A DNA stretch of 64,000 nucleotides from Vitrella brassicaformis CCMP3155 (lineage: Eukaryota > Protista > Chromerida), in the NCBI GenBank assembly GCA_001179505.1, contig CDMY01000869.1, forward strand, positions 1-64,000. The letters run 5' to 3'. Shown in pieces: positions 10,452 through 57,800 of this stretch. The notes beneath the pieces were generated by a model, which was not told the origin of the DNA, searched no databases, and saw nothing but the letters and a program-made list of their open reading frames with translations. Within the stretch, counting starts at the first letter, position 1; the number at the start of each line of letters is the position of its first letter. Both the position numbers and the translations under genes were made by a program.

Positions 10452-12006
10452 CTAAGACTTGCAGGCGTACGTTCTGCACACACAAACACACACACACACA
10501 CGATTACACCCACCCATCAGATGTGAGAGCAAGTGATAGTCCACCGACCTGTTCCACTCCCGAGCTGCAACCATCCCGTCCACACACACAGGCAGAAGTG
10601 ACAGCACACCCATCCCACCCACACGGGTCTAGTCAAATGACGGATGTTTGTGTGGGTGCGGCAGGCCGGCCCACGTTGGGATGGTCAGCTTACCGACGTT
10701 CTCTGCGTCCCGTTTGTTCTGCTTGAAGTGGTCGGCCACCGATGTGTCCAGGGGGTCATCCGGCTCGGGCGACGAAAGCAACGCCTACATGGACAGATAC
10801 GCATCCCATCCCGACGCATAAACAATTCAGTAGCTGGCTTGTAGGCATGCTGTGTGTGGGAGTGTGTGGGAGTGTGTGTGTGTGTGTGGATGGACGGCTG
10901 GCGGTTTGTTCATTGGCTCACTTGTATGGAGAGCAGCACGGTCCGTATTTGGAGTGCGGGGCTCCACTTGTCCTTCAACACGTCCAAACAAATGCGACCC
11001 AGCTTATCCTACATCGCATCCATGCAGCACGCCACCACACCACACCAGCAACACAGATCGATATACACAACCACCGACGGGCACACTGTGATGTGATGCG
11101 GTCGGTGTATTGCNNNNNNNNNNNNNNNNNNNNNNNNNNNNNNNNNNNNNNNNNNNNNNNNNNNNNNNNNNNNNNNNNNNNNNNNNNNNNNNNNNNNNNN
11201 NNNNNNNNNNNNNNNNNNNNNNNNNNNNNNNNNNNNNNNNNNNNNNNNNNNNNNNNNNNNNNNNNNNNNNNNNNNNNNNNNNNNNNNNNNNNNNNNNNNN
11301 NNNNNNNNNNNNNNNNNNNNNNNNNNNNNNNNNNNNNNNNNNNNNNNNNNNNNNNNNNNNNNNNNNNNNNNNNNNNNNNNNNNNNNNNNNNNNNNNNNNN
11401 NNNNNNNNNNNNNGGGGGGGGCGTTGTGTGTGTTGCTGGGGATGGATGCGTCTGTGCGTACGATATTAGGGTGGTATATCTTGGTGAGGAATCGGACTTT
11501 GGGCGGCTCCATGGGGTAGCCCTCGGGCAGGAAAAGCTCCAAATGATACAAACCATCTGCACACACACACACACACAGAGAGATACATACAACAAACAGA
11601 ACAGTCGACGCCACCCAAAGACGCGTCAAGTCCTAGTGCGCCCTTGGTTCCATCTGTCTGTCTGTCTGTCTTTCTGTGGCCACCCATCCACCCATGCACG
11701 AGTGCCTGCCAGTCCCCCTCCCTCCCTCCCTCCCTATGTGTATGCGTGTCCACCCTTTCACTCACCTTGGTATGGGGTGCCCTCGGGTCCCTCCATCAGC
11801 ACCTTGAAGTAGCGGTAGTTACCCGAGTCGGGCTGCGCATTGATACCGGGAGCTGACACACAACACACACACAGCCGCGGTACAACCAACACACACCACA
11901 GGAAGAGTACGCGACTGCCTGTCTGGTGTGGCTGCTTACGAGGCTCCTGGCTGAGTTTGAGGGTCTCCTTCTCGATGCGCTTGGGAATGCCCGCCTGCTG
12001 CGCCAT
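10452..12006 (-). CDS. UBC13: Ubiquitin-conjugating enzyme E2 N (Ubc13)
   Basis: [58 protein letters not shown]|[29 protein letters not shown]|[12 protein letters not shown]. Includes a 16-nt exon at 10549-10564. Confidence 0.95.
11114..11413. other. Assembly gap (300 N) within a UBC13 intron
   Basis: N run followed by a G homopolymer. Confidence 1.
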
Positions 12007-14285: not shown

Positions 14286-14585
14286 NNNNNNNNNNNNNNN
14301 NNNNNNNNNNNNNNNNNNNNNNNNNNNNNNNNNNNNNNNNNNNNNNNNNNNNNNNNNNNNNNNNNNNNNNNNNNNNNNNNNNNNNNNNNNNNNNNNNNNN
14401 NNNNNNNNNNNNNNNNNNNNNNNNNNNNNNNNNNNNNNNNNNNNNNNNNNNNNNNNNNNNNNNNNNNNNNNNNNNNNNNNNNNNNNNNNNNNNNNNNNNN
14501 NNNNNNNNNNNNNNNNNNNNNNNNNNNNNNNNNNNNNNNNNNNNNNNNNNNNNNNNNNNNNNNNNNNNNNNNNNNNNNNNNNNNN
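14286..14585. other. Assembly gap (300 N)
   Basis: N run flanked by poly-C on both sides. Confidence 1.
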
Positions 14586-47661: not shown

Positions 47662-49897
47662 TCAGGTCCTGAGGTAGCTTCGCTGGCGCTTCTTCTGCAC
47701 AGCCTGGGGAGCCGCACCTATCTCACCTGCACACAACACACACACACACACACACACAGACAGACACACAGACAGACCATGATGAGACAGGGAGTGAGTG
47801 AGGTGGTCGGGGTGGCGTGTCCGTCCGTGTCTCACCAGTAATAGAGTCCATGATGAATTCGGCCGGCATGGTTTGTGTCTTGGGCACTCGTAGGATGGTG
47901 AGGCCACCCAGAGGTATCTTCCCCATGTCGATCTGGATGTGCGGGTACTCCGTCTTGAAGTACTGAATGAATCCGATCAACCGCACATACGTACGTACAT
48001 ACGCATGCCATTCATGCCCAAGGGCACAACCAATCAGGCAAGGAAGCAAGCAACACAGGGCGCCTGGGTGCGCTGGCTGCATCTAGTCAGTGTACGCAAG
48101 AATGTCTGGCTGCCTGCCTGCCAGTGTTGCGTGGGCCAACGTAGGTAACCTGTACGAGGGCGCTCGGGGGTGGCGGCTCGAACCCCTCAGGGAGGGCCTC
48201 CCACCTAGACAGACAGGACAAACATACGTTCGCACAGATCGACGACTCACACACACACGTGACAAATCTATCTCCGAGGGTGAATCTGTCTGTCTGTCTG
48301 TCTGTCACCTCCCTCCCTCCCTCCCTCCCTCACTTGTCCAGGATAGGGTTGTGGTATGCCCGCACCAGTGGCACACCCCGCATACTGTCGTCAGTGTCGG
48401 CGTCCGAGTAACTGCACTCACGCCACAGCAGGCAAACAAACAAGTCGACAGACATGACACATGCTAACTTCATGTCGAGCAGCAAAGAGTCCGGCGCCGC
48501 AGAGCCCAGCCAGCCAGCCAGCCAGCCAGCCACCCCCGACATGCATGTCATGTATGTTGCTCACTCTGGGTGATTCTGTCCGTGTATGTCAGCGGCGAAG
48601 AGTCCGACGATCGACACGCCGAGGAACACAAGCACCATGTAGGCAATCTGCGACATACAGGCACCAGACCAGGGTGGGGATGCATATGTATATGCAAGCC
48701 AAGCCGTCCGGTGATTGTGTGTGTACACGTGCATATGATATGATAGTATGTGTACGCATCTAAGTATGGATGGATGTATGTGTTGGTGTGTGTCACGGCG
48801 TGTGTTTGGTGCTGTGCTGTGCTGTGCTGCTCACGGGGAACATGGGGTGCACGTCATCGGGGGGCACGTGGTCCTTGATGCCTGGGGGAATAACCAATTC
48901 ATCAAGCACCCATCCACCCACCCACCCACTCAGTCAATCAGTGAGTCAGTGACACCCCTCGCCGCCTCACCTGCCGCGTACTTCTTGTAGCGCTCGCGAC
49001 GCGCCTCTGCAATCGATTGCAGCACAACACAAGCCAATCAATGATGGTGCGGTGCGTCCTCTCGACACTGCCCGGCATTCATTCATTCTTGTTGATTGCA
49101 ATGCAGTCATTGCAACAAGGATGAATGCCGTGTGCGACTGACTGTACTGACTGACCCCTCTCCTCAGCGGTTTCCATCCTCCACTTGTGCTGCCAATAGT
49201 CGCGCATTGTCTGGGTGGTGCCAGCTCCGCCCTGTGCTGCACTGCCAGCAGCCTTGACATCTTCCATCGTGAACTGAATCTCGGCATCGTACTGGCTCCT
49301 CTTCCACTTGTCGTTGAGGACCTTGTACGCCTCCTGCACCTCGTGGAAGCGGTCGGCGGCACGGGGGTCGTTGGGGTTCTGGTCGGGGTGACACTCCTTG
49401 ACCCTCTGCAGGTACCTCTCTTTTATCTGAGACGGACGCGCCGTGCGAGGGATGCCCAACACATCGTAATAGGTCCGCTCCCTGCGCTTGGCCGTGCCGC
49501 CTCGAGAGCCGGTGGCCCTGCTGCCGGAGCTGCCGCTATTGCTGCCGCTGCTGTCGCCCCCAGTGCCGCTCGACGACCTGCCACGTGCCGACTGGTTGTC
49601 TTGCTGTGAGCTCCAAGTGCCGTGGTGGTTGCTGGTACTATTGTTGCTGTTGTGCGATGATGAGTCGCTGGTGGCGTCACCGGAGCTCCTGCGCTCTCCA
49701 TGGCTGCCACCCACCCTCCGCCCATCCTTGCTGTATCCCGTGCTCTTATAGCTCCCACCACCATACCTCGGATCATGAGCCGTCTTGAGGACCATGCGGC
49801 TGCTGTGCACGTGCCGAGAAGCTCCGCGACCATGGACCATTGATCGGACCAGGCACCGGTGCAAATGCCTGTGCAGAGCAGGGTGCCACATCATCAT
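47662..49897 (-). CDS. DnaJ (J-domain) protein, probably mitochondrial
   Basis: TYYDVLGI..IKERYLQRVKECHPDQNPNDPRAADRFHEVQEAYKVLND..RSQYD contains the HPD motif. The N-terminus is R/H-rich and presequence-like; there is a hydrophobic segment in a later exon. Confidence 0.9.
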
Positions 49898-49994
49898 TGC
49901 CGCCACGCATCATATCATTGGTTAAATAGACCCGGATGTTGCCGCACGGACGGACGGATGACGTGACGCCAGAAAAGGGAGTGCAGATCTTTTC

Positions 49995-50004: not shown

Positions 50005-50039
50005 CGGCTTCCGAATCTGCCCCTACATGTTCTGCAGGG

Positions 50040-53000
50040 ATGTATCATTTGGTGTGTGTCTTTCTGCTGCTTATCGGTGATTAATGAGTCCAACAACACA
50101 ACAAGTGCAGCTGGTGTACTTGTGTGCCCTGCCTGTCGCCTGTCTGTCTGTCATGCATCGCAGATGAGAGGGCGCAGGGGTTTTTGGGACCAAAGGCAAT
50201 ACCAGGATACTCTCACAGGAGTGAGCAGCCGCACCCACTGGGCTGCGTCAACATACTCTTGAGATCTGATCTACATGCAGGCTCATGGCGGCCTGCGGCG
50301 CCCCGTCGAGTGATTCTCTCATCAACGTCTGTCAAACAGAAGCAGCAGGTGGGCGGGTGGGTGGGTGTGCTGGTACGGACAGACAGACCGACGTACACGT
50401 GACTGTTTGTTTGCTCATAGTTATTGTACGTCCCTGTGTGCTGTTTGTTGTGTTGCGTGTGGGCAGTCCCCCGCGGTGCTCCCGAGGCGGTCGCTGCCGA
50501 CCCAGAACGCCAACCCCAACCCAACCGACGATGAAAAGATACAAGTCCTCCAGGTAGGTGTGTGTGTGTGCGTGTGTATGTGAGAGAGAGAGATGATCAC
50601 CTTTTATTCACTCCCCTGACTCATAGTGGATGGCGTCTGCAACATACTGACTGACTCACTGACACTGCATTCATTCATTCATTCAGTCTTCCATCCATCC
50701 ATCCATCCATTGATTGATTGGTTGATTGCCACCGTGTGTGTGGGTAGTACAAGCTTGACAGCGGCCTCAAGTGGTCTGAGATGGAGCAGCTGACGGGGTA
50801 CTCGATGCGCACCATGCGGGAGTGGGCAGTGTCCTGGAATGAGGGCGACCTCAATCCCACCATGCAGGACCAGACAGAACAGCAAATCTACTACCAAGGT
50901 ACCGTACCAGCCACCTTAGGTCACCCACCCACCCACCCACCCTGGATGCATGTGGCCGCCGTNNNNNNNNNNNNNNNNNNNNNNNNNNNNNNNNNNNNNN
51001 NNNNNNNNNNNNNNNNNNNNNNNNNNNNNNNNNNNNNNNNNNNNNNNNNNNNNNNNNNNNNNNNNNNNNNNNNNNNNNNNNNNNNNNNNNNNNNNNNNNN
51101 NNNNNNNNNNNNNNNNNNNNNNNNNNNNNNNNNNNNNNNNNNNNNNNNNNNNNNNNNNNNNNNNNNNNNNNNNNNNNNNNNNNNNNNNNNNNNNNNNNNN
51201 NNNNNNNNNNNNNNNNNNNNNNNNNNNNNNNNNNNNNNNNNNNNNNNNNNNNNNNNNNNNNNCCCACCCACCCTGGATGCATGTGGCCGCCGTATCATTC
51301 ATTCATTCATTCGTTCATGGTCTGTGTGTGTGGTATCTATCTATGTGACTATGTGTGTGCAGCAGAGTTTGAGGATTTTGAGCGTCAGGAGTACGAGAGG
51401 AGTATGTCAGAGCTGCCCCGGCAGTCGTCGTCGCCGCGGCCGACCAACAACCAGAAGATCCAGGTCATCCAGTTCAAGGCCGACTACGGCACACCATGGC
51501 GGGAACTGGAAGTCGTCACGGGATACCCCAGGTGGGTGAATGGGTGGTGACCTGGGGACGGACGTGGGGACAAAAAAACCACCGGTGACCTACCTGCGAG
51601 TAGATGGATGGATGCCATGCATGGGGTACCATTTTCGTGAGCTGAGCCGCTCAATATTGGCTGGCATGTGTTTGTGTCTGTGTCCGTGTATCCTGGCTTG
51701 GCTGGCTATGTGCAGGAGCGAGATGCGTGAGTGGGCCCGTCGGTGGAACGCAGGTCGGCTGACGTACGAGTATGAGGAGGGGGACTACGGGTACGAGGAG
51801 GGCGGCGAGGAGGGTGCCGAGGAGGACGACACCGAGGGCCAGCCGTCCCTGGGGCTGCCCACCAAGGCCGACTTCCCCGCCCCATCCACCGACCAGAAGC
51901 TGGCCGTCGTCAAGTTCCGCGAGGACAACGGGCTGCGCTGGTCGGAAATGGAGAAACTCACGGGGTACACCAAGAAGACCATGGCCACATGGGCCGATGC
52001 ATACAACAAGGTACGTACCTGCGTTCCCCACGCACATGCACACCATCCCTCCCTCCCTCCCTCATGTCTCTTCTGTGTGTGTGTGTCCTGTCTGTCTGTC
52101 TGTCTGTCTGTCTGCAGGGTAAGTTGTACGAGACCCTGGCCGAGGATGATGATTTGGAGGCCACTGTCGGCAAGCCTGCCCAGCTGCAGCAGCCACCCGT
52201 CACCGTAGTGTCGGAGAGCAGCCTGCCCACAAAAAAGGCCGCAAGGACCCCCACGGTAACCGAGTGAGAGGTTGACATGAGTTGTACCCTCCCACCATGT
52301 GGCTCTTTGGGTTTGTATCAATGCAGGCAGCCCAGAAGCAGGCGGTGATAATGTTCAAGCAGGCCGGCAACAAGAAGTGGGCCGACATGGAACGGCTCAC
52401 GGGGTACTCCAAGGGAGAAATGAGAAAGTACGTCAGCCAACAGACCAGAGCCGCCAGACAGGACAGGACAGGACATTACGCACCACATATCGATGACCTC
52501 ACGAGCAACGAAGGAAGGAAGGGAGTGATGGAGTGATGGATGGATATTCGCTGCTTGGTGTGTGCGTGTGTGACCGAATGAATGCAGATGGTCTGAGGAG
52601 TACGAGAAGGGTCTCCTGATTGACGACCCCGCCCTGGCCCAGCCACGAGAGGAAGAAGAAATACTCTTCGACGAACCGGGGGTCAGCCGCTCTGCTCACT
52701 CCACCGCACACACACACACCACACGCGACGCACCCGGAGGGACGGACGGAGCACACGCAACCCCCACGTATATATATATGCCTGCGGCAGACATGTGTGT
52801 CTCGTGTGCCTGCCTGGTGTTAAATATTATTATACTTGGGCAACCATACCATTTCTACCTACGTATGTTATTTATGTGCAGCCCAAGACGACTGTGTATG
52901 AGATCGGGAATGTGTGGACCGACATGAGCGCACCTGCCGTCCTCACCGATGAACCGCAGCCCTTCTTCTGGCAAGAAGAACTCTCTGATGAGGTCAGTCA

Positions 53001-54176
53001 GTGAGTGAGTGAGTGAGTGAGCCAACCACCGGCAGGCAGGGATACATACACCCATGAAGGACACATGCCTTGTCTGTGTGTGAGCGTGCAGGGTGCAGAG
53101 GGCCCTGTCCGTCGCGTCTTGATCCCTGGTCGGGAGGTGCCTGAAGAATTCCAACCTGCGTAAATGAACGAACACTGAAGCGACAGAAACTCTCTCGGCT
53201 ACAGACGTGCCCATGCCATGTGCGCGATGCCCATTCTGCACTGCACAGGTGGGGGTCGGTAACGGAAGCACAAGAGGCAGAGGTGAGTGAATGAGTGAGA
53301 CGTGCAATGGAGGCCAGACCGACCCCTCCATTTTGATGTGCATGTCTTGCCTTCCTGCCTGCCTTCCTGCAGCTTGTCAACGCAACCAGTGGGGCGCCAT
53401 CCGCGTATCTCGTAAGGCTCCCTGATAGAGAGACACCTGGCGTGTGGACGACTTGGTCACCTGCTGTGGTCCCTCTGTGGCTGGCCGTCTGGCTGGTTGG
53501 GTGCATGCAGTCGTCATCGTCTGTACGTCGGCCGTCGAGTTGGCGGCGTCCGCGCGGGTCGACCATCGTGAGCGGTGTGAGGCGGCTCAGACAACTCGAG
53601 AGGGAACGAGAGGCCAAGAGAAGAAGACAGGTAAACATATATGTACTCACAGACGGACGGACAGACGGACGGGCCGTCGGGTACGTACATTCTTTCCTTC
53701 CTTCCTTGATTGCTTGCTTGCATTGTTCACTGGCTGGCTGTGTCCGTTGGCAGGTGTTGCTGTCCCAGTTGAACGAGGGCAAGCTGGCGGAGCGTGACCA
53801 GAGTGTGGATGTGTTTGCGGAGGAGGGTGTGATCCGGCCGCTGGTCCGCATCTATGACGACCGCACCGAGAAGGAGTACTGGGTGGAGTGGAAGAGGCTG
53901 CCCAAGAAGACACGCAAGAGGCGGCGGCAGCTTTCACGCCGCACCGAGCAGCGCCTCAGGCGGGAGCTCACGGCACCATGGCGACAGAACTGGAGTGGCG
54001 GACTCGTACTGGGCGTCCTTGTCACCGTCGTACTTTTGAAACTCTTCCCAGGTACAGACAGACACGGATCCAGGGGCAGCAGGGTAGCTATAAGGTAACG
54101 TCGCCACAGCCAAGCTGCCGTTGGTCCTTTCATTCTACCAGGTCTCTTGGATGTCGTGCCGATAGAGATCCCGTAA
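50040..54176 (+). CDS. Protein with a bipartite-like leader, four tandem HTH-like repeats and two C-terminal hydrophobic segments
   Basis: MYHLVCVFLLLI|DERAQG-FLGP... is followed by four ~40-aa repeats (K-x-x-V...W-x-E/D-M/L-E-x-x-TGY...M-x-x-W...G), then VVPLWLAVWLVG and GLVLGVLVTVVLLKLF; the last exon is GLLDVVPIEIP*. Confidence 0.75.
50963..51262. other. Assembly gap (300 N), probably spurious
   Basis: The same ~31 nt (cccacccaccctggatgcatgtggccgccgt) lies on both sides of the gap. Confidence 0.9.
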
Positions 54177-54815
54177 GACAAGACACGCACGTCAACATAA
54201 TGAATGCATTCACCTGTTGACATTACTTACGCTACACATACCCACTCATATATCCTCGCCTCCTGCCTGCATCTTGCGTGGCTGACTGACTGACAGGGAC
54301 ATCACCGGCACGGTGCGTAAGTAACGACTGGTGGATGGATGGATGGAGGCGTGGCAGGCAGATAGATATATATTATGGATGGATACCGCCTGTCTGTCTT
54401 GTCTGTGTGTTTCAGATCGAGACGTCTCCTGCATCATGAACGCGTGTGCGCGTGTGCCCCCCTCCCCTCCCCTGCGATGCGGTCGTGTTGCCTTGCCTCG
54501 TAGCGCTTTGCATGTGAGACGTGACGGTGTAGTGGTTGTGGGATAGGGCGAGTGCCGCTGGCTGCTTGCCATTTGTGAACATTGGGTATCAATCGACCGT
54601 GGGGAGCCAGCTGTGAGTTTCAGCCATCGATGTGGACAAATAGATATGTTGAGGCGGGTCCGCCCACCGACCCCTCGTCGCGAGTACTCAACACCATTCA
54701 TTCGGTCTGACTGGCACGTCCTGACGTTGGCTGACTGCACTGACTGACAACACTCAGTAGGCACCCTTCGACCAACCCTAGATAGATCTACGCCCTCTTT
54801 GACTCACTCTCTCAG

Positions 54816-57800
54816 TCACTCATCTGTCTGAGTGGAGGTGACGACCCCGATGGCAGCTGTCTTGGGTCCGTCGCACAGCAGCACGGGCATCGACGGGCAC
54901 ACGTACTCAGGCCGGCACAGAAACAAAAAGTTTATGTGCGCTGTCTCACCAGTCCTGAACGAACAATCATTCAATCAAGCAATGAATCACACCACACAGA
55001 CCGGTGAGTACACAGGGGCCTTTTCTGTCTCTTCAATGTCGGCTCCCTCCCTCCCTCTATCCCTTGTTTCTTCGTTTGTTGCGCACCTGACGCATTGGGA
55101 ATCAGTCAGGACACCCGTCACCACCACAGTCTGATCGAGGGCAGGAACAGACAGACAGACAGGGCCAGGCCAGGCCAGGCCAGGCAGGCCCCACACACAG
55201 CCAACACATGCATCCATCCATCCATGAATGAATGTCGATCAAACAGTCACTCAGTCAATCGCCAAGGTATGCATTGCATGCCCCCACCTGCCCCCCAACC
55301 GACCCTTTTGCCCACCCACCTGTCTGATGGAGTGTAGGTGTACGACATATTCTTTCTTGGGTCTGATGCCGCAGCCCTGTTCGATGACGGTCATGACGGC
55401 CTGGAAGGTATAGACGGGCCGCGGCGGGTCGTGGTTCCACTGTGTCAGGTTGAAGGCAAACATACCCGCACGCAGCGCACTGCGACTCGACGACCGCCGC
55501 CGCAGACTCCTGTCGTCCTCACCACCCTGGTAATGGTCCTCCGACAAACCATCATCCCAATCGTCATCCGAGTCCAAACTGCTGCCGGTGCTGCCCTTGG
55601 ACTTCCGCTTGCCCTCCTTGCCGCTCCTCGACGGATCTCGCCACGCACGCCGGCTGGTGGTGGGCGGTGGGGGGCTCGAGTCGGGCACTTGAAGCATCTT
55701 GGGAGACGATGGCGGGGGCCCCTCGTCGGGCCGGCCGGCGGATGGGGATGCCGCAGCAGGACCGCTGACCTCTGGTCGACGGGGTGAGCCGGCGGTGTGT
55801 TGCTTGGCCCTCCCAGCCGGCTGCCGACGGTCGACGTCTTGGTCTTGTTCTAAGGGGGCTGGTGAGGGAGAGTCATCGGGCTGGGCCCCGTCGAGCGGCA
55901 TGAGAGGGGGTGAGTCTGGCTCGGGTAGGGTGAGAGCCAGGGGGGTGTAGGCCATGCGCCAGTTGCCCCCAGACTGGTGCCGCCGCGACGCCCCCTCCTT
56001 GAAGACGTTGGGTGACGACGGCTGGCTGGACGCCTGGCCTCGCTGCGGGAAGCCGGCGGCGTGCAGGGGGCTCTCGGATGATGGGCCGATGGCTAGCTCA
56101 CGGCCGTTGGGCTGCTGTGACGCGACGACATTCATGGCCGTCATGGCTGCCAGGAAGCCGCGATTGATGCTCACACCTCCATCAGATGGCGGGGGTGAAG
56201 ACACTGCGCGCCCAATGGGAGCCGGTGCTGCCGCAGCCGGGGGAACACTCTTTCCCTCGATGTCGTCCTTGTTTGCCGCGTCGGGAGGCGCTGCTTCTTC
56301 CTTGGGCTCAGCCGGCATTGTTGGTTGAGTTGGCTCTTGAGTGGGTGTGTCTGGTTGCTGTGCCGACTGCGGCGTGGCATCGGAATGGCCGACAAAGGGA
56401 AACGACACCACCGACTCGCCGCCGTCCGTAAACTCGATGGCAAAGGAACTGATTGAGACAGCACAGCCACAGGGAACAATCCATGATCCACTGCCAGGCC
56501 TGCCTCTTCCTTCGGTTCACGCATCAGTTGTGTCTGTGTGTACCCTACCACTTCTGCCCAGCGTAGGTCGTATCGACAGGCACTCTGCAAGCCAAAAGAA
56601 TGTACGTACGAATGACACAGAGGATGGGCGGTGTGTGTGTGTGCATGCAGTATCTATCTATCTCGTAACATCTGCTGCTTCCCTCTAGCTCCTTCCTCGA
56701 GTTAGTAAGTGAGTGAGTGACTGGTTGGTTCAACCGACCTGTTGACGTGGATGGATTTGACGAGTATGGGTACCCAGTGGTGAGGTCCACACCGCTCCAC
56801 AAACGACAGAGGGGACAGACGCGGCGACTGGGACGCAGACGGACGCTTGCCCTTCCGGCCAGTGCTGGGCGGCGGGGGGGCACTTCCTGCTCCTGTTGCT
56901 GCTGCTGCTGGTGGTGGTGGTGTCTCGTCTTGTTGCTGTTGTTGTGTGTGTTCGTCGGTCTTGGGTCGGTCGTCGAGCTCATCGTGGAGCGCCGTGAACT
57001 CAGAGTGGGTGAACGGACCGCAGTGCAATATGTCCTCTGAAAGCAGAGGAGAGAGAGAGGAGAAGATTGAAGTATGTACGTACGTCCGTGGCTCAGGTAG
57101 GTGTGGGGCATCCATCCATCTGCACCGGTGGTTACTGTGCTTACGTTTTGACACACTGCCGGTGAGCAGCAGCCCGCCTATGACGATACCACTCACACCT
57201 GAGGGAGACCACACGCCAGCCAACGGACCAACGTCACACATGTTATGGGACGATAGATACGAGTGAGGGAGTGACGTGACCCAGCCGCTGGCTCCAGCGG
57301 CTGCCCCCTCGGTGACTGACTGACTGACTGACCGTGCACATTGGGGTATATTTCGTCAATGAGGAACTGGGCTGGGTGGGCACGGCGCCTCTGCCACTCA
57401 ACCGACGGGGGCACCACACGCAAGAAATTGCGGAACAAGTCAACCCCAGTGCCATCCACACACGATATCTGACACACACGCAGACGGCAGACACAGAGAC
57501 TCGTCCTCCCTCAGTCCACATCTGTTTGTTTCCCAGGGCATGTGTGTGTGTCTTATCTTACGCACCCACCCGGAAGACCGGAATGCAGTGAGGGTTGAGT
57601 GTGAGCTTGATGTCCCGATTGCCGCCGCCCGTGTTGTCCCCCCGTTTGCGGTGTTTGTTGACTACCAGAGGCGATGCCGCCCTGGCATTGGCCGTCGGGG
57701 ACGGCGGGTGTCCGTTGAGGAGCTGCTCGGCCGAGGGTGAGAGGGGCAGGGTGGGGTGGCCGCCGGGCACGATACCGCTCACGGCCATCAAGGGGCTGGG

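What the first reader, a model, noticed from the sequence alone, without database searches (positions are those of the whole stretch)
50040..54176. Probably plastid-targeted, membrane-anchored protein with four tandem helix-turn-helix repeats
Seen after splicing: R1 EKIQVLQ|YKLDSGLKWSEMEQLTGYSMRTMREWAVSWNEG; R2 QKIQVIQFKADYGTPWRELEVVTGYP|RSEMREWARRWNAG; R3 QKLAVVKFREDNGLRWSEMEKLTGYTKKTMATWADAYNK|G; R4 QKQAVIMFKQAGNKKWADMERLTGYSKGEMRK|WSEEYEKG. The repeats are separated by acidic/Pro-rich linkers. Established: the spacing (helix, W..M/LE..TG turn, recognition helix ending W...Y/W..G) resembles the homeodomain-like HTH of IS3/IS630-type transposases. Seen: a signal-like MYHLVCVFLLLI..AQG-F leader with an S/R/P-rich follow-on, and two hydrophobic segments near the C-terminus. 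Inference: a multivalent DNA-binding protein tethered to a plastid membrane, e.g. a nucleoid anchor or transcription regulator, possibly domesticated from a transposase HTH. This is the best candidate for an undescribed system in this window.
Basis: partly seen in the sequence, partly recalled or inferred. Interest (0 to 1): 0.75.

Follow-up and report, generated by a model that had tools for sequence, protein, structure and literature searches.

The report
Membrane-anchored four-HTH protein of Vitrella
This is a real, expressed gene of the alga Vitrella brassicaformis, with one relative in Chromera, encoding a probable plastid leader, four helix-turn-helix modules on flexible acidic linkers and one membrane anchor, so it may tether plastid DNA to a membrane; neither location nor DNA binding has been tested.

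Summary
The four repeats are real. The gene is the annotated but uncharacterised Vitrella brassicaformis protein CEM35889.1 (645 aa, 19 exons, CDS 50040-54439).

**Gene model.** Transcript contigs from two studies confirm 12 of the 18 splice junctions. These include the junction across the N gap. The gap lies in an intron and is an assembly artefact: its flanks share 31 identical bases, and a DNA contig bridges it.
- Its second exon holds an extra intron.
- Its stop codon lies in an intron; two more small exons follow.
- There is one hydrophobic segment near the C-terminus, not two.

**Fold.** A single repeat folds with high confidence (pLDDT 93.8) into a three-helix HTH. The nearest structures are almost all nucleic-acid-binding three-helix HTH domains, mostly DNA-binding (CENP-B N-terminal domain, Brinker, SorC, Tc3 and IstA transposases, sigma region 4). 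Pfam HTH_28 is hit only below threshold. Linkers are predicted disordered.

**Relatives.** The only relative among 1.84 billion representatives is Chromera velia Cvel_26956. It has the same architecture with two repeats.

**Targeting and topology.** Both proteins have a signal-peptide-like start, Phe after the likely cleavage site, and a 52-55 aa acid-free stretch. A basic patch precedes the anchor.

Plastid targeting is likely and DNA binding plausible. The nucleoid-anchor role is inferred only.

The parts
50040..54439 (+). Coding span of the gene (19 exons, 645 codons plus TGA) = CEM35889.1 / A0A0G4GXQ4 of Vitrella brassicaformis CCMP3155
   Evidence: Every exon translation is found in P0001 at the expected residue. 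Identity of P0001.
50040..50076 (+). Exon 1: ATG and short hydrophobic start (aa 1-12)
   Evidence: Annotation. Its joint was not printed by read laying. The length of the X1 contig (267 nt 5' of exon 5) fits exons 4+3+2 plus 55 nt here.
50164..50220 (+). Exon 2 (aa 13-32; holds the AQG|F site)
50281..50348 (+). Exon 3 (transit-peptide-like stretch)
   Evidence: X1 depth in bin 50202-50352 fits about 87 nt, not 147.
50467..50553 (+). Exon 4 (end of leader, arm and first helix of R1)
   Evidence: (depth).
50748..50898 (+). Exon 5 (rest of R1, start of linker 1)
   Evidence: Transcript contigs X1 and X7.
50963..51293 (.). Assembly gap (300 N, 50963-51262) plus a duplicated 31-base flank (51263-51293), inside intron 5. 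An artefact, not sequence.
   Evidence: 31-base overlap of the flanks. X3 DNA contig goes from 50962 to 51294. RNA joint 50898|51363.
51363..51531 (+). Exon 6 (linker 1, arm and first two helices of R2)
51716..52010 (+). Exon 7 (third helix of R2, acidic linker 2, nearly all of R3)
52118..52255 (+). Exon 8 (linker 3)
52327..52427 (+). Exon 9 (R4, helices 1-2 and start of helix 3)
52588..52681 (+). Exon 10 (end of R4, acidic stretch)
52882..53630 (+). Exons 11-15 (52882-52992, 53092-53159, 53249-53282, 53373-53411, 53511-53630): acidic middle part, then the start of the basic part
   Evidence: All five joints appear in X1 and X7. No Pfam match.
53754..54051 (+). Exon 16: basic region (aa 524-602) and the transmembrane segment (aa 603-622 = 53991-54050)
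54142..54172 (+). Exon 17 (conserved tail motif after the anchor).
   Evidence: X1 and X7 depth in bin 54128-54278 equals about 36 nt only.
54297..54312 (+). Exon 18 (5 codons)
   Evidence: Annotation, matches P0001. Not resolved by reads because of repeats.
54416..54439 (+). Exon 19 with stop TGA 54437-54439
50527..50846 (+). Repeat R1 (aa 75-116; intron 50554-50747 inside). Net charge -3.
51446..51755 (+). Repeat R2 (aa 162-203; intron 51532-51715 inside). Net +2. Best HTH_28 hit, E 0.0048.
51888..52120 (+). Repeat R3 (aa 248-289; intron 52011-52117 before the last residue). Net +2.
52327..52612 (+). Repeat R4 (aa 335-376; intron 52428-52587 inside). Net +3.

Best explanation
This is a single-copy nuclear gene found only in chromerids. 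It encodes a protein that is probably imported into the plastid by a bipartite leader: a signal peptide, Phe at +1, and an acid-free transit peptide.

The protein is held in a plastid membrane (thylakoid or inner envelope) by one C-terminal helix. The basic juxtamembrane region and the whole N-terminal part face the stroma. The short acidic tail lies on the other side.

The stromal part carries four independent, mostly basic three-helix HTH modules. Each has a conserved Pro-rich N-terminal arm. The modules are strung on disordered acidic/aromatic linkers. The likeliest job is multivalent, low-specificity binding of plastid DNA, which would tether or organise the nucleoid at the membrane. That makes it a functional analogue of plant PEND and MFP1, not a homologue.

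Shown: the gene model, expression, the repeats, the predicted HTH fold, the orthologue and the single hydrophobic anchor. Inferred: plastid import, topology, nucleic-acid binding and the tethering role.
For: Gene and expression.

Repeats:
- They are significant and unique in the genome.
- The single-repeat fold has pLDDT 93.8 with helices at 2-15, 19-26 and 30-41.
- 29 chains reach Z of 5 or more. Nearly all are nucleic-acid-binding three-helix HTH domains: mostly DNA-binding, plus four mitoribosomal chains and one spliceosomal Myb-like protein. Examples: SorC 6.2, CENP-B 6.0, LsrR 5.9, Brinker 5.8, Tn3 resolvase, IstA, Tc3, sigma-4.
- The Foldseek hit with the highest TM-score is the CENP-B-N domain of distal antenna: TM 0.73, 28% identity.
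- HTH_28 is matched by 3 of 6 repeats over the whole domain.
- The best PDB sequence hit is the HTH of AlpA.
- ESM Atlas neighbours by features and by structure are transposase-type HTH clusters.
- Five of six repeats are basic, pI 9.2-9.6; linkers have net charge -2 to -12.
- The two-repeat model shows two folded units, linkers under pLDDT 50 and pTM 0.36.

Leader:
- Vitrella has AQG|F and Chromera AVS|F after a hydrophobic start. An acid-free stretch of 55 or 52 residues follows, in otherwise acid-rich proteins.
- Chromerid plastid proteins use exactly such signals, with Phe at +1 (PMC6668581).

Anchor and topology:
- One hydrophobic segment is present in each orthologue, followed by a conserved tail motif.
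- The flank N-terminal to the anchor is strongly basic (net +14 over aa 500-602) and the tail is acidic. By the positive-inside rule (established knowledge) the N-terminal bulk sits on the stromal or cytosolic side. That is the opposite of a secreted type I protein.

Precedent: PEND and MFP1 are membrane-anchored nucleoid binders restricted to flowering plants (PMC4154389).
Against: - No localisation or binding data exist.
- The Vitrella hydrophobic start is only about 9 residues and has no basic n-region. An out-of-frame ATG lies 13 nt upstream, at 50027.
- The joints of exons 1-4 were not displayed.
- No signal-peptide or ASAFind predictor could be run.
- R1 is acidic (net -3), and the acidic linkers could mask the modules or compete with DNA.
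- Small three-helix HTH units also bind RNA or proteins. Mitoribosomal and spliceosomal Myb-like proteins are among the neighbours.
- Z of 5-6 is within the range the tool calls common for helical models.
- All Pfam hits are below the gathering scores.
Confidence: 0.38

Rival explanations
1. The protein is in the plastid and membrane-anchored, but the HTH modules bind RNA or proteins rather than DNA. Examples would be holding mRNAs, ribosomes, or a sigma factor or polymerase subunit at the membrane. The protein would then be a scaffold or membrane-tethered regulator of plastid gene expression, not a nucleoid tether.
For: - Neighbours include sigma-70 region 4 in complex with anti-sigma factors, mitoribosomal proteins (8a22, 8d8j, 9evs, 6yw5) and spliceosomal Cdc5 Myb-like domains, at the same Z as the DNA binders.
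- The acidic/aromatic linkers look like protein-interaction motifs.
- R1 is acidic.
Against: - The closest matches by sequence (HTH_28, AlpA, CENP-B-N at 28% identity) are DNA binders.
- Five of six modules are basic.
Confidence: 0.22
2. The protein is not in the plastid. It is tail-anchored in the ER or nuclear envelope with the HTH array in the cytosol or nucleoplasm. It would be a chromatin tether at the nuclear envelope, or a membrane-tethered transcription factor released by cleavage. The N-terminal leader would be mis-annotated or non-functional.
For: - A C-terminal single anchor with a basic N-flank and a short tail is the classic tail-anchor layout.
- The Vitrella signal peptide is weak, and exon 1 is not shown by reads.
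- The basic patch before the anchor resembles a nuclear localisation signal.
Against: - The Chromera orthologue has a clear 25-residue signal peptide followed by Phe.
- Both orthologues keep a 52-55 aa acid-free stretch. This is unlikely by chance in such acid-rich proteins: about 0.83^55, my estimate from the composition.
Confidence: 0.18
3. It is a secretory-pathway or periplastid-compartment type I membrane protein. Its HTH-like modules would be structural repeats with no nucleic-acid role.
For: A signal peptide plus one C-terminal transmembrane helix is formally a type I layout.
Against: - The charge distribution around the anchor is the reverse of type I.
- Phe at +1 directs import across the inner plastid membranes in red-lineage complex plastids (PMC6668581).
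- There are no Cys pairs or glycosylation-rich features. The fold neighbours are intracellular nucleic-acid binders.
Confidence: 0.08

Closest known systems
CENP-B N-terminal / Psq / Brinker type HTH domains (eukaryotic DNA-binding domains derived from pogo/Tc1-like transposases)
   Same: - Three-helix homeodomain-like HTH of about 45-50 aa.
- Best structural fits: 1hlv Z 6.0, rmsd 1.6 over 48 residues; 2glo Z 5.8; 2elh TM 0.73 with 28% identity.
- They occur in tandem pairs in some proteins.
   Different: - No significant sequence match.
- Here there are four copies with a 45-aa acidic spacer, a conserved Pro-rich arm, a targeting leader and a membrane anchor.
- The known proteins are nuclear.
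Pfam HTH_28 (PF13518) and relatives HTH_29, HTH_23, HTH_Tnp_1, DUF4096: N-terminal HTH of IS3/IS630/IS4-5 transposases
   Same: - End-to-end alignment of the repeat to positions 1-40 of the 52-position HTH_28 model in 3 of 6 repeats.
- The same helix-2 / Gly turn / helix-3 pattern ending in a conserved Trp.
- ESM Atlas neighbours are of these families.
   Different: - Scores of 14.7-17.4 bits for the Vitrella repeats whose score was printed, against a cut-off of 25.
- No transposase catalytic domain anywhere in the protein.
- The Vitrella genome has no HTH_28 match at E of 0.001 or better.
[quoted passage not shown]
   Same: Overall logic: N-terminal plastid presequence, DNA-binding domain near the N-terminus, a long acidic or repetitive middle, and a C-terminal membrane anchor. 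It tethers nucleoids to the inner envelope (PMC4154389).
   Different: - PEND binds DNA through a bZIP-like domain, not an HTH.
- No homology.
- PEND is restricted to angiosperms and lives in a primary plastid with a simple transit peptide.
[quoted passage not shown]
   Same: It is a thylakoid-anchored, coiled-coil nucleoid-binding protein. The Chromera orthologue carries a Glu/Lys/Arg-rich helical spacer of about 460 aa between the modules and the anchor.
   Different: - The MFP1 anchor is N-terminal, and its DNA binding lies in the coiled-coil C-terminus.
- No homology.
- The Vitrella spacer is short.

Membership tests
Pfam HTH_28 (PF13518), transposase-type HTH | Score at or above the curated gathering cut-off (25 bits) | tested here: not met
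   Best repeat scores 17.4 bits, E 0.0048. Three of 6 repeats match at E of 10 or better. The collection's precomputed hits list PF13518 for P0001, at a looser threshold.
Pfam HTH_28 (PF13518), transposase-type HTH | Three-helix HTH fold with a Gly-containing turn between helices 2 and 3 | tested here: met
   AF2 pLDDT 93.8, with helices at 2-15, 19-26 and 30-41. The invariant T26-G27 sits in the turn. Neighbours are HTH DNA binders.
Pfam HTH_28 (PF13518), transposase-type HTH | Linked to a transposase catalytic domain, or traceable descent from one | tested here: not met
   No DDE or other transposase domain in P0001 or P0002. No significant transposase hit among 1.84e9 proteins.
Proteins with a bipartite plastid-targeting signal of red-lineage complex plastids | N-terminal ER signal peptide with small residues at -3 and -1 | tested here: inconclusive
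   By eye only. Chromera has a 25-aa signal with A-V-S before the site. Vitrella has a short h-region of about 9 aa with A-Q-G before the site. KD>1.5 windows are found at the Chromera N-terminus but not in Vitrella. No SignalP was available.
Proteins with a bipartite plastid-targeting signal of red-lineage complex plastids | Phe (aromatic) at +1 of the cleavage site | tested here: met
   Phe follows the likely site in both orthologues. The motif is described for chromerids in PMC6668581. The cleavage sites themselves are inferred.
Proteins with a bipartite plastid-targeting signal of red-lineage complex plastids | Transit peptide poor in acidic residues, rich in Ser/Arg/Pro/Ala | tested here: met
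   The leader segments have net charge +8 (Vitrella aa 1-73) and +7 (Chromera aa 1-107). There are no Asp or Glu for 55 and 52 residues after the Phe.
Proteins with a bipartite plastid-targeting signal of red-lineage complex plastids | Experimental plastid localisation | not testable with these tools
   No paper mentions Cvel_26956. It is absent from the supplements of PMC6668581.
Plastid nucleoid membrane anchors (PEND, MFP1; a functional class) | Homology to PEND (bZIP) or MFP1 | tested here: not met
   No bZIP or related Pfam match.
Plastid nucleoid membrane anchors (PEND, MFP1; a functional class) | Presequence plus nucleic-acid-binding domain plus one membrane anchor in one chain | tested here: met
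   This is an architectural analogy only.
Plastid nucleoid membrane anchors (PEND, MFP1; a functional class) | Binds plastid DNA and co-localises with nucleoids at a membrane | not testable with these tools
   Needs EMSA or DAP-seq and microscopy.
Chromo domain (the UniRef name of A0A0G4GXQ4) | Match to the chromo domain model | tested here: not met
   No Pfam Chromo hit at E of 10 or better, either in the whole protein or in aa 500-602 and 530-585. The stretch is not conserved in Chromera.
Myb/SANT repeats | Three regularly spaced Trp (about 19 apart) and a match to Myb models | tested here: not met
   No Myb or SANT Pfam hit. The invariant Trp residues are 17 apart, and the first helix lacks one. 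Myb-like domains are only mid-list structural neighbours.

The most novel reading that the evidence does not exclude
Chromerids have evolved their own plastid nucleoid-to-membrane tether from an array of transposase-like HTH modules. It would be the first such anchor known outside flowering plants and the first in a red-lineage complex plastid. It would have arisen independently of PEND and MFP1. The module number (2 versus 4) and the spacer length (about 460 versus about 100 aa) would be tuned differently in Chromera and Vitrella, whose plastid genomes differ strongly in form.
Probability: 0.27. Interest if true: 0.7.

Novelty: new variant of a known kind. Interest (0 to 1): 0.45.

Why it matters
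Proteins that organise plastid DNA are known almost only from land plants (PMC4154389). Outside them little is known. My own recollection, not checked here, is that the bacterial-type HU protein is the described case in apicomplexans and red-lineage algae.

Chromerids are the photosynthetic sisters of apicomplexan parasites. From memory, again unchecked, their plastid genomes are unusual: linear and fragmented in Chromera, compact and circular in Vitrella.

A lineage-specific, membrane-anchored, multivalent HTH protein with a plastid leader gives a concrete, testable candidate for how these genomes are held at a membrane. It would also show convergent invention of a PEND-like architecture from a different DNA-binding fold.

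If the protein proves to be non-plastid, it is still a new HTH family with an unusual membrane-tethered, beads-on-a-string layout.

Tried and rejected
**Searches that found nothing**
- The word search with the exon holding R3 found nothing; it only sees proteins of 54-171 aa.
- The word search with P0001 found only itself.
- The metagenome scan with the repeat profile gave 54 pattern matches, none confirmed.
- The own-genome searches found no paralogue and no HTH_28 match.
- Hits P0003-P0009 of the big search are spurious. They are PAS-domain, ankyrin-like and other repeat proteins that share short words around 'LTGYS' or 'GxKW'.

**Matches taken as noise**
- Pfam Reelin_subrepeat-B, PWWP, OMP_b-brl_3, CAF1A_dimeriz, Cornifin and C2c1_Nuc-II are isolated sub-threshold matches with no consistency across repeats.

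**Names and literature**
- The UniRef name 'Chromo domain-containing protein' was not reproduced.
- Papers and supplements were searched for the gene identifiers: nothing.
- Earlier notes of the scan near this place concern other genes.

**Steps not taken or not possible**
The database protein P0001, returned by a search and equal to each exon's translation piece by piece, was used instead.
- A profile-profile comparison against an HTH_28 alignment could not be made, because no HTH_28 sequences were on hand.
- SignalP, ASAFind and TMHMM are not available. Kyte-Doolittle windows and charge counts were used instead.


Full report
**What the window is**

The window's genome has 72,700,666 bases in 1064 contigs. 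The protein encoded at this place is recorded as CEM35889.1 / A0A0G4GXQ4 of Vitrella brassicaformis CCMP3155. The region is intron-rich nuclear DNA with about 55-60% G+C.

**The gap (tested first)**

The 300 N at 50963-51262 lie inside an intron. Transcript contigs in two runs from different studies (X1, 2707 nt; X7, 1676 nt) join 50898 to 51363 with GT..AG ends. The frame runs on: the last base of exon 5 plus the first two of exon 6 form one codon, and the flanking translations sit at residues 84-133 and 135-189 of the database protein.

The gap is also an assembly artefact. The 31 bases before it are identical to the 31 bases after it. A DNA contig of run X3 goes from 50962 directly to 51294, with exactly the 51 letters that separate 51294 from 51345. 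The true intron is therefore 133 nt. X3 may come from the same sample as the assembly, so it is an independent assembly rather than an independent organism.

**Gene model**

A profile of the repeats, built from exon pieces given by reference (A3), was searched against 1.84 billion representative proteins. It returned P0001 (645 aa, E 9e-89).

Translating each of 19 exons in its phase gives strings that occur in P0001 exactly at the expected residues. All introns are GT..AG. Twelve junctions (exon 5 through exon 17) are seen in both transcript contigs: eleven as printed joints, and 52010|52118 from adjacent contig pieces.

That exon holds a further intron at 50221-50280. The X1 depth of 17.3 in bin 50202-50352 corresponds to about 83-87 nt of a contig of depth 31.6. 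It is too low for the 147 nt that an unsplit exon would need.
- **Stop codon in an intron.** The TAA at 54174 lies in an intron whose donor is GTAAGA at 54173. Both transcript contigs cover only about 36 nt of bin 54128-54278. The protein ends 12 residues later, via exons 54297-54312 and 54416-54439.
- **One hydrophobic segment, not two.** Only aa 603-622 qualifies near the C-terminus.

The first four junctions were not among the joints printed. The 267 nt of X1 that lie 5' of exon 5 equal exons 4+3+2 (212 nt) plus 55 nt. That would cover exon 1 and 18 nt of leader, which is consistent but not proof. An out-of-frame ATG at 50027 opens an 18-codon upstream frame.

**The repeats**

- There are four units at residues 75-116, 162-203, 248-289 and 335-376, with a period of 86-87 aa.
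- Against the whole genome in six frames, the exon holding R3 finds the other three at E 5.8e-6, 2.5e-5 and 9.2e-4, and nothing else.
- The six-repeat profile finds only these.
- Invariant positions across the four Vitrella and two Chromera repeats are K5, W19, E23, T26, G27 and W36.
- Each unit is preceded by a conserved Leu-Pro ... Pro-x-Pro arm.
- Each unit is followed by an acidic, Tyr/Phe-rich linker with net charge -2 to -12.
- Introns cut the four repeats at four different positions. The repeats were therefore not copied recently together with their introns.

**Fold**

With the six repeats as alignment, AlphaFold2 gives pLDDT 93.8 and pTM 0.73, with three helices at 2-15, 19-26 and 30-41.

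An exhaustive structural comparison gives 29 chains at Z of 5 or more. Nearly all are nucleic-acid-binding three-helix HTH domains, most of them DNA-binding. The top ones are SorC, CENP-B, LsrR, Brinker, DeoR, Tn3 resolvase, small terminase, ArdK, IstA, sigma region 4, TnpE and Tc3. Four mitoribosomal chains and one spliceosomal Myb-like protein are also among them.

Foldseek finds nothing at E of 0.001 or better, as expected for 50 residues. Its hit with the highest TM-score is the CENP-B-type domain of distal antenna: TM 0.73, rmsd 2.1, 28% identity. The tool warns that Z under 8 can reflect a common arrangement, so this shows fold class, not descent.

By sequence:

- Three of six repeats align end to end with Pfam HTH_28 (best E 0.0048, 17.4 bits against a cut-off of 25). 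Single repeats touch HTH_29, HTH_36 and DUF4096.
- The best solved-structure sequence hit is the helix-turn-helix of AlpA (E 0.027).
- ESM Atlas neighbours, by language-model features (0.79, a lead only) and by its own model, are transposase-type HTH clusters.

A two-repeat model shows two folded units (pLDDT 77-87) including the arm. The linkers score below 50 and pTM is 0.36, which means beads on a string.

**Relatives**

The only other significant protein is P0002 (980 aa, E 7e-14), Chromera velia Cvel_26956. It has two repeats, which align best with R3-R4 of Vitrella (35% over 179 aa, E 3e-29). It also has the same arm, the same acidic/aromatic follow-on and a Glu/Lys/Arg-rich spacer of about 460 aa. 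It ends with one C-terminal hydrophobic segment followed by a tail motif shared with Vitrella. No relative was found in JGI metagenomes.

**Targeting and topology (inference from sequence)**

- Chromera starts with a typical 25-residue signal peptide ending A-V-S, followed by Phe.
- Vitrella has a short hydrophobic start ending A-Q-G, followed by Phe.
- After the Phe, both have 52-55 residues without any Asp or Glu, rich in Ser, Arg, Pro and Ala. The leader segments have net charge +7 (Chromera) and +8 (Vitrella).
- Chromerid plastid proteins use a signal peptide directly followed by a transit peptide, with a conserved Phe after the cleavage site. That Phe is stronger in Chromera than in Vitrella (PMC6668581).
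- The flank before the anchor is very basic (net +14 over aa 500-602) and the tail is acidic.
- By the positive-inside rule (established knowledge) the N-terminal bulk lies on the stromal or cytosolic face. That argues against a secreted type I protein.

**Function**

Five of six modules are basic (pI 9.2-9.6), and their closest sequence and structure neighbours bind DNA. Several weakly binding modules on flexible linkers, fixed to a membrane, would give avidity-based tethering of DNA.

This is the logic of PEND (inner envelope, bZIP) and MFP1 (thylakoid, coiled coil), which are restricted to flowering plants (PMC4154389). I rate plastid import at about 0.65, nucleic-acid binding at about 0.55, and the full tether model at about 0.3-0.4.

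The rivals are RNA or protein binding in the plastid, a tail-anchored nuclear-envelope or ER protein, and a type I secretory protein.

**Known or new**

The gene is annotated but uncharacterised. No paper in the library mentions its identifiers. The UniRef name 'Chromo domain-containing protein' is not reproduced by Pfam.

The fold is a known kind. The family falls below every Pfam threshold and has two members worldwide so far. Its architecture (plastid leader, HTH array, membrane anchor) has, to my knowledge, not been described.

Noticed in passing
window 49079-49906 (-): The divergent upstream neighbour is a DnaJ (J-domain) protein gene. Its ORF ends about 130 nt from the ATG at 50040, so the two genes probably share a short bidirectional promoter region.
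   Followed up: no
window 50027-50080 (+): An out-of-frame ATG lies 13 nt before the annotated start. It opens an 18-codon upstream frame that overlaps the start codon, whether spliced or unspliced. It may lower or regulate translation, or the transcription start may lie after it.
   Followed up: partly
window 14286-14585: A second 300-N gap in the window also has identical flanks (15 bases). This suggests another unmerged overlap rather than missing sequence. The gaps at 11114 and 13038 show no such overlap.
   Followed up: no
window 51360-51365: The acceptor of intron 5 is a tandem CAGCAG. Either AG keeps the frame, with one Ala more or less. The transcript contigs and the annotation use the first.
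   Followed up: partly
window 50549-50733, 51294-51344, 52035-52121, 52993-53025, 54325-54350: The introns are full of short tandem motifs (cattcatt, ccatccat, ctgtctgt, gagtgagt, tggatgga). These recur all over the genome and attract many foreign contig ends and false joints in the read layout.
   Followed up: no
P0001 aa 545-575 (window about 53817-53909): A stretch that superficially resembles the first half of a chromo domain probably explains the UniRef name. It has no Pfam support and is absent from the Chromera orthologue.
   Followed up: partly
window 55340-56500 (-): A long open stretch on the minus strand begins about 900 nt downstream of the stop. It is presumably the next gene, convergent with this one. 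By length accounting, the X1 contig's 3' part (about 790 nt beyond exon 17) suggests a 3' UTR reaching to about 55180.
   Followed up: no
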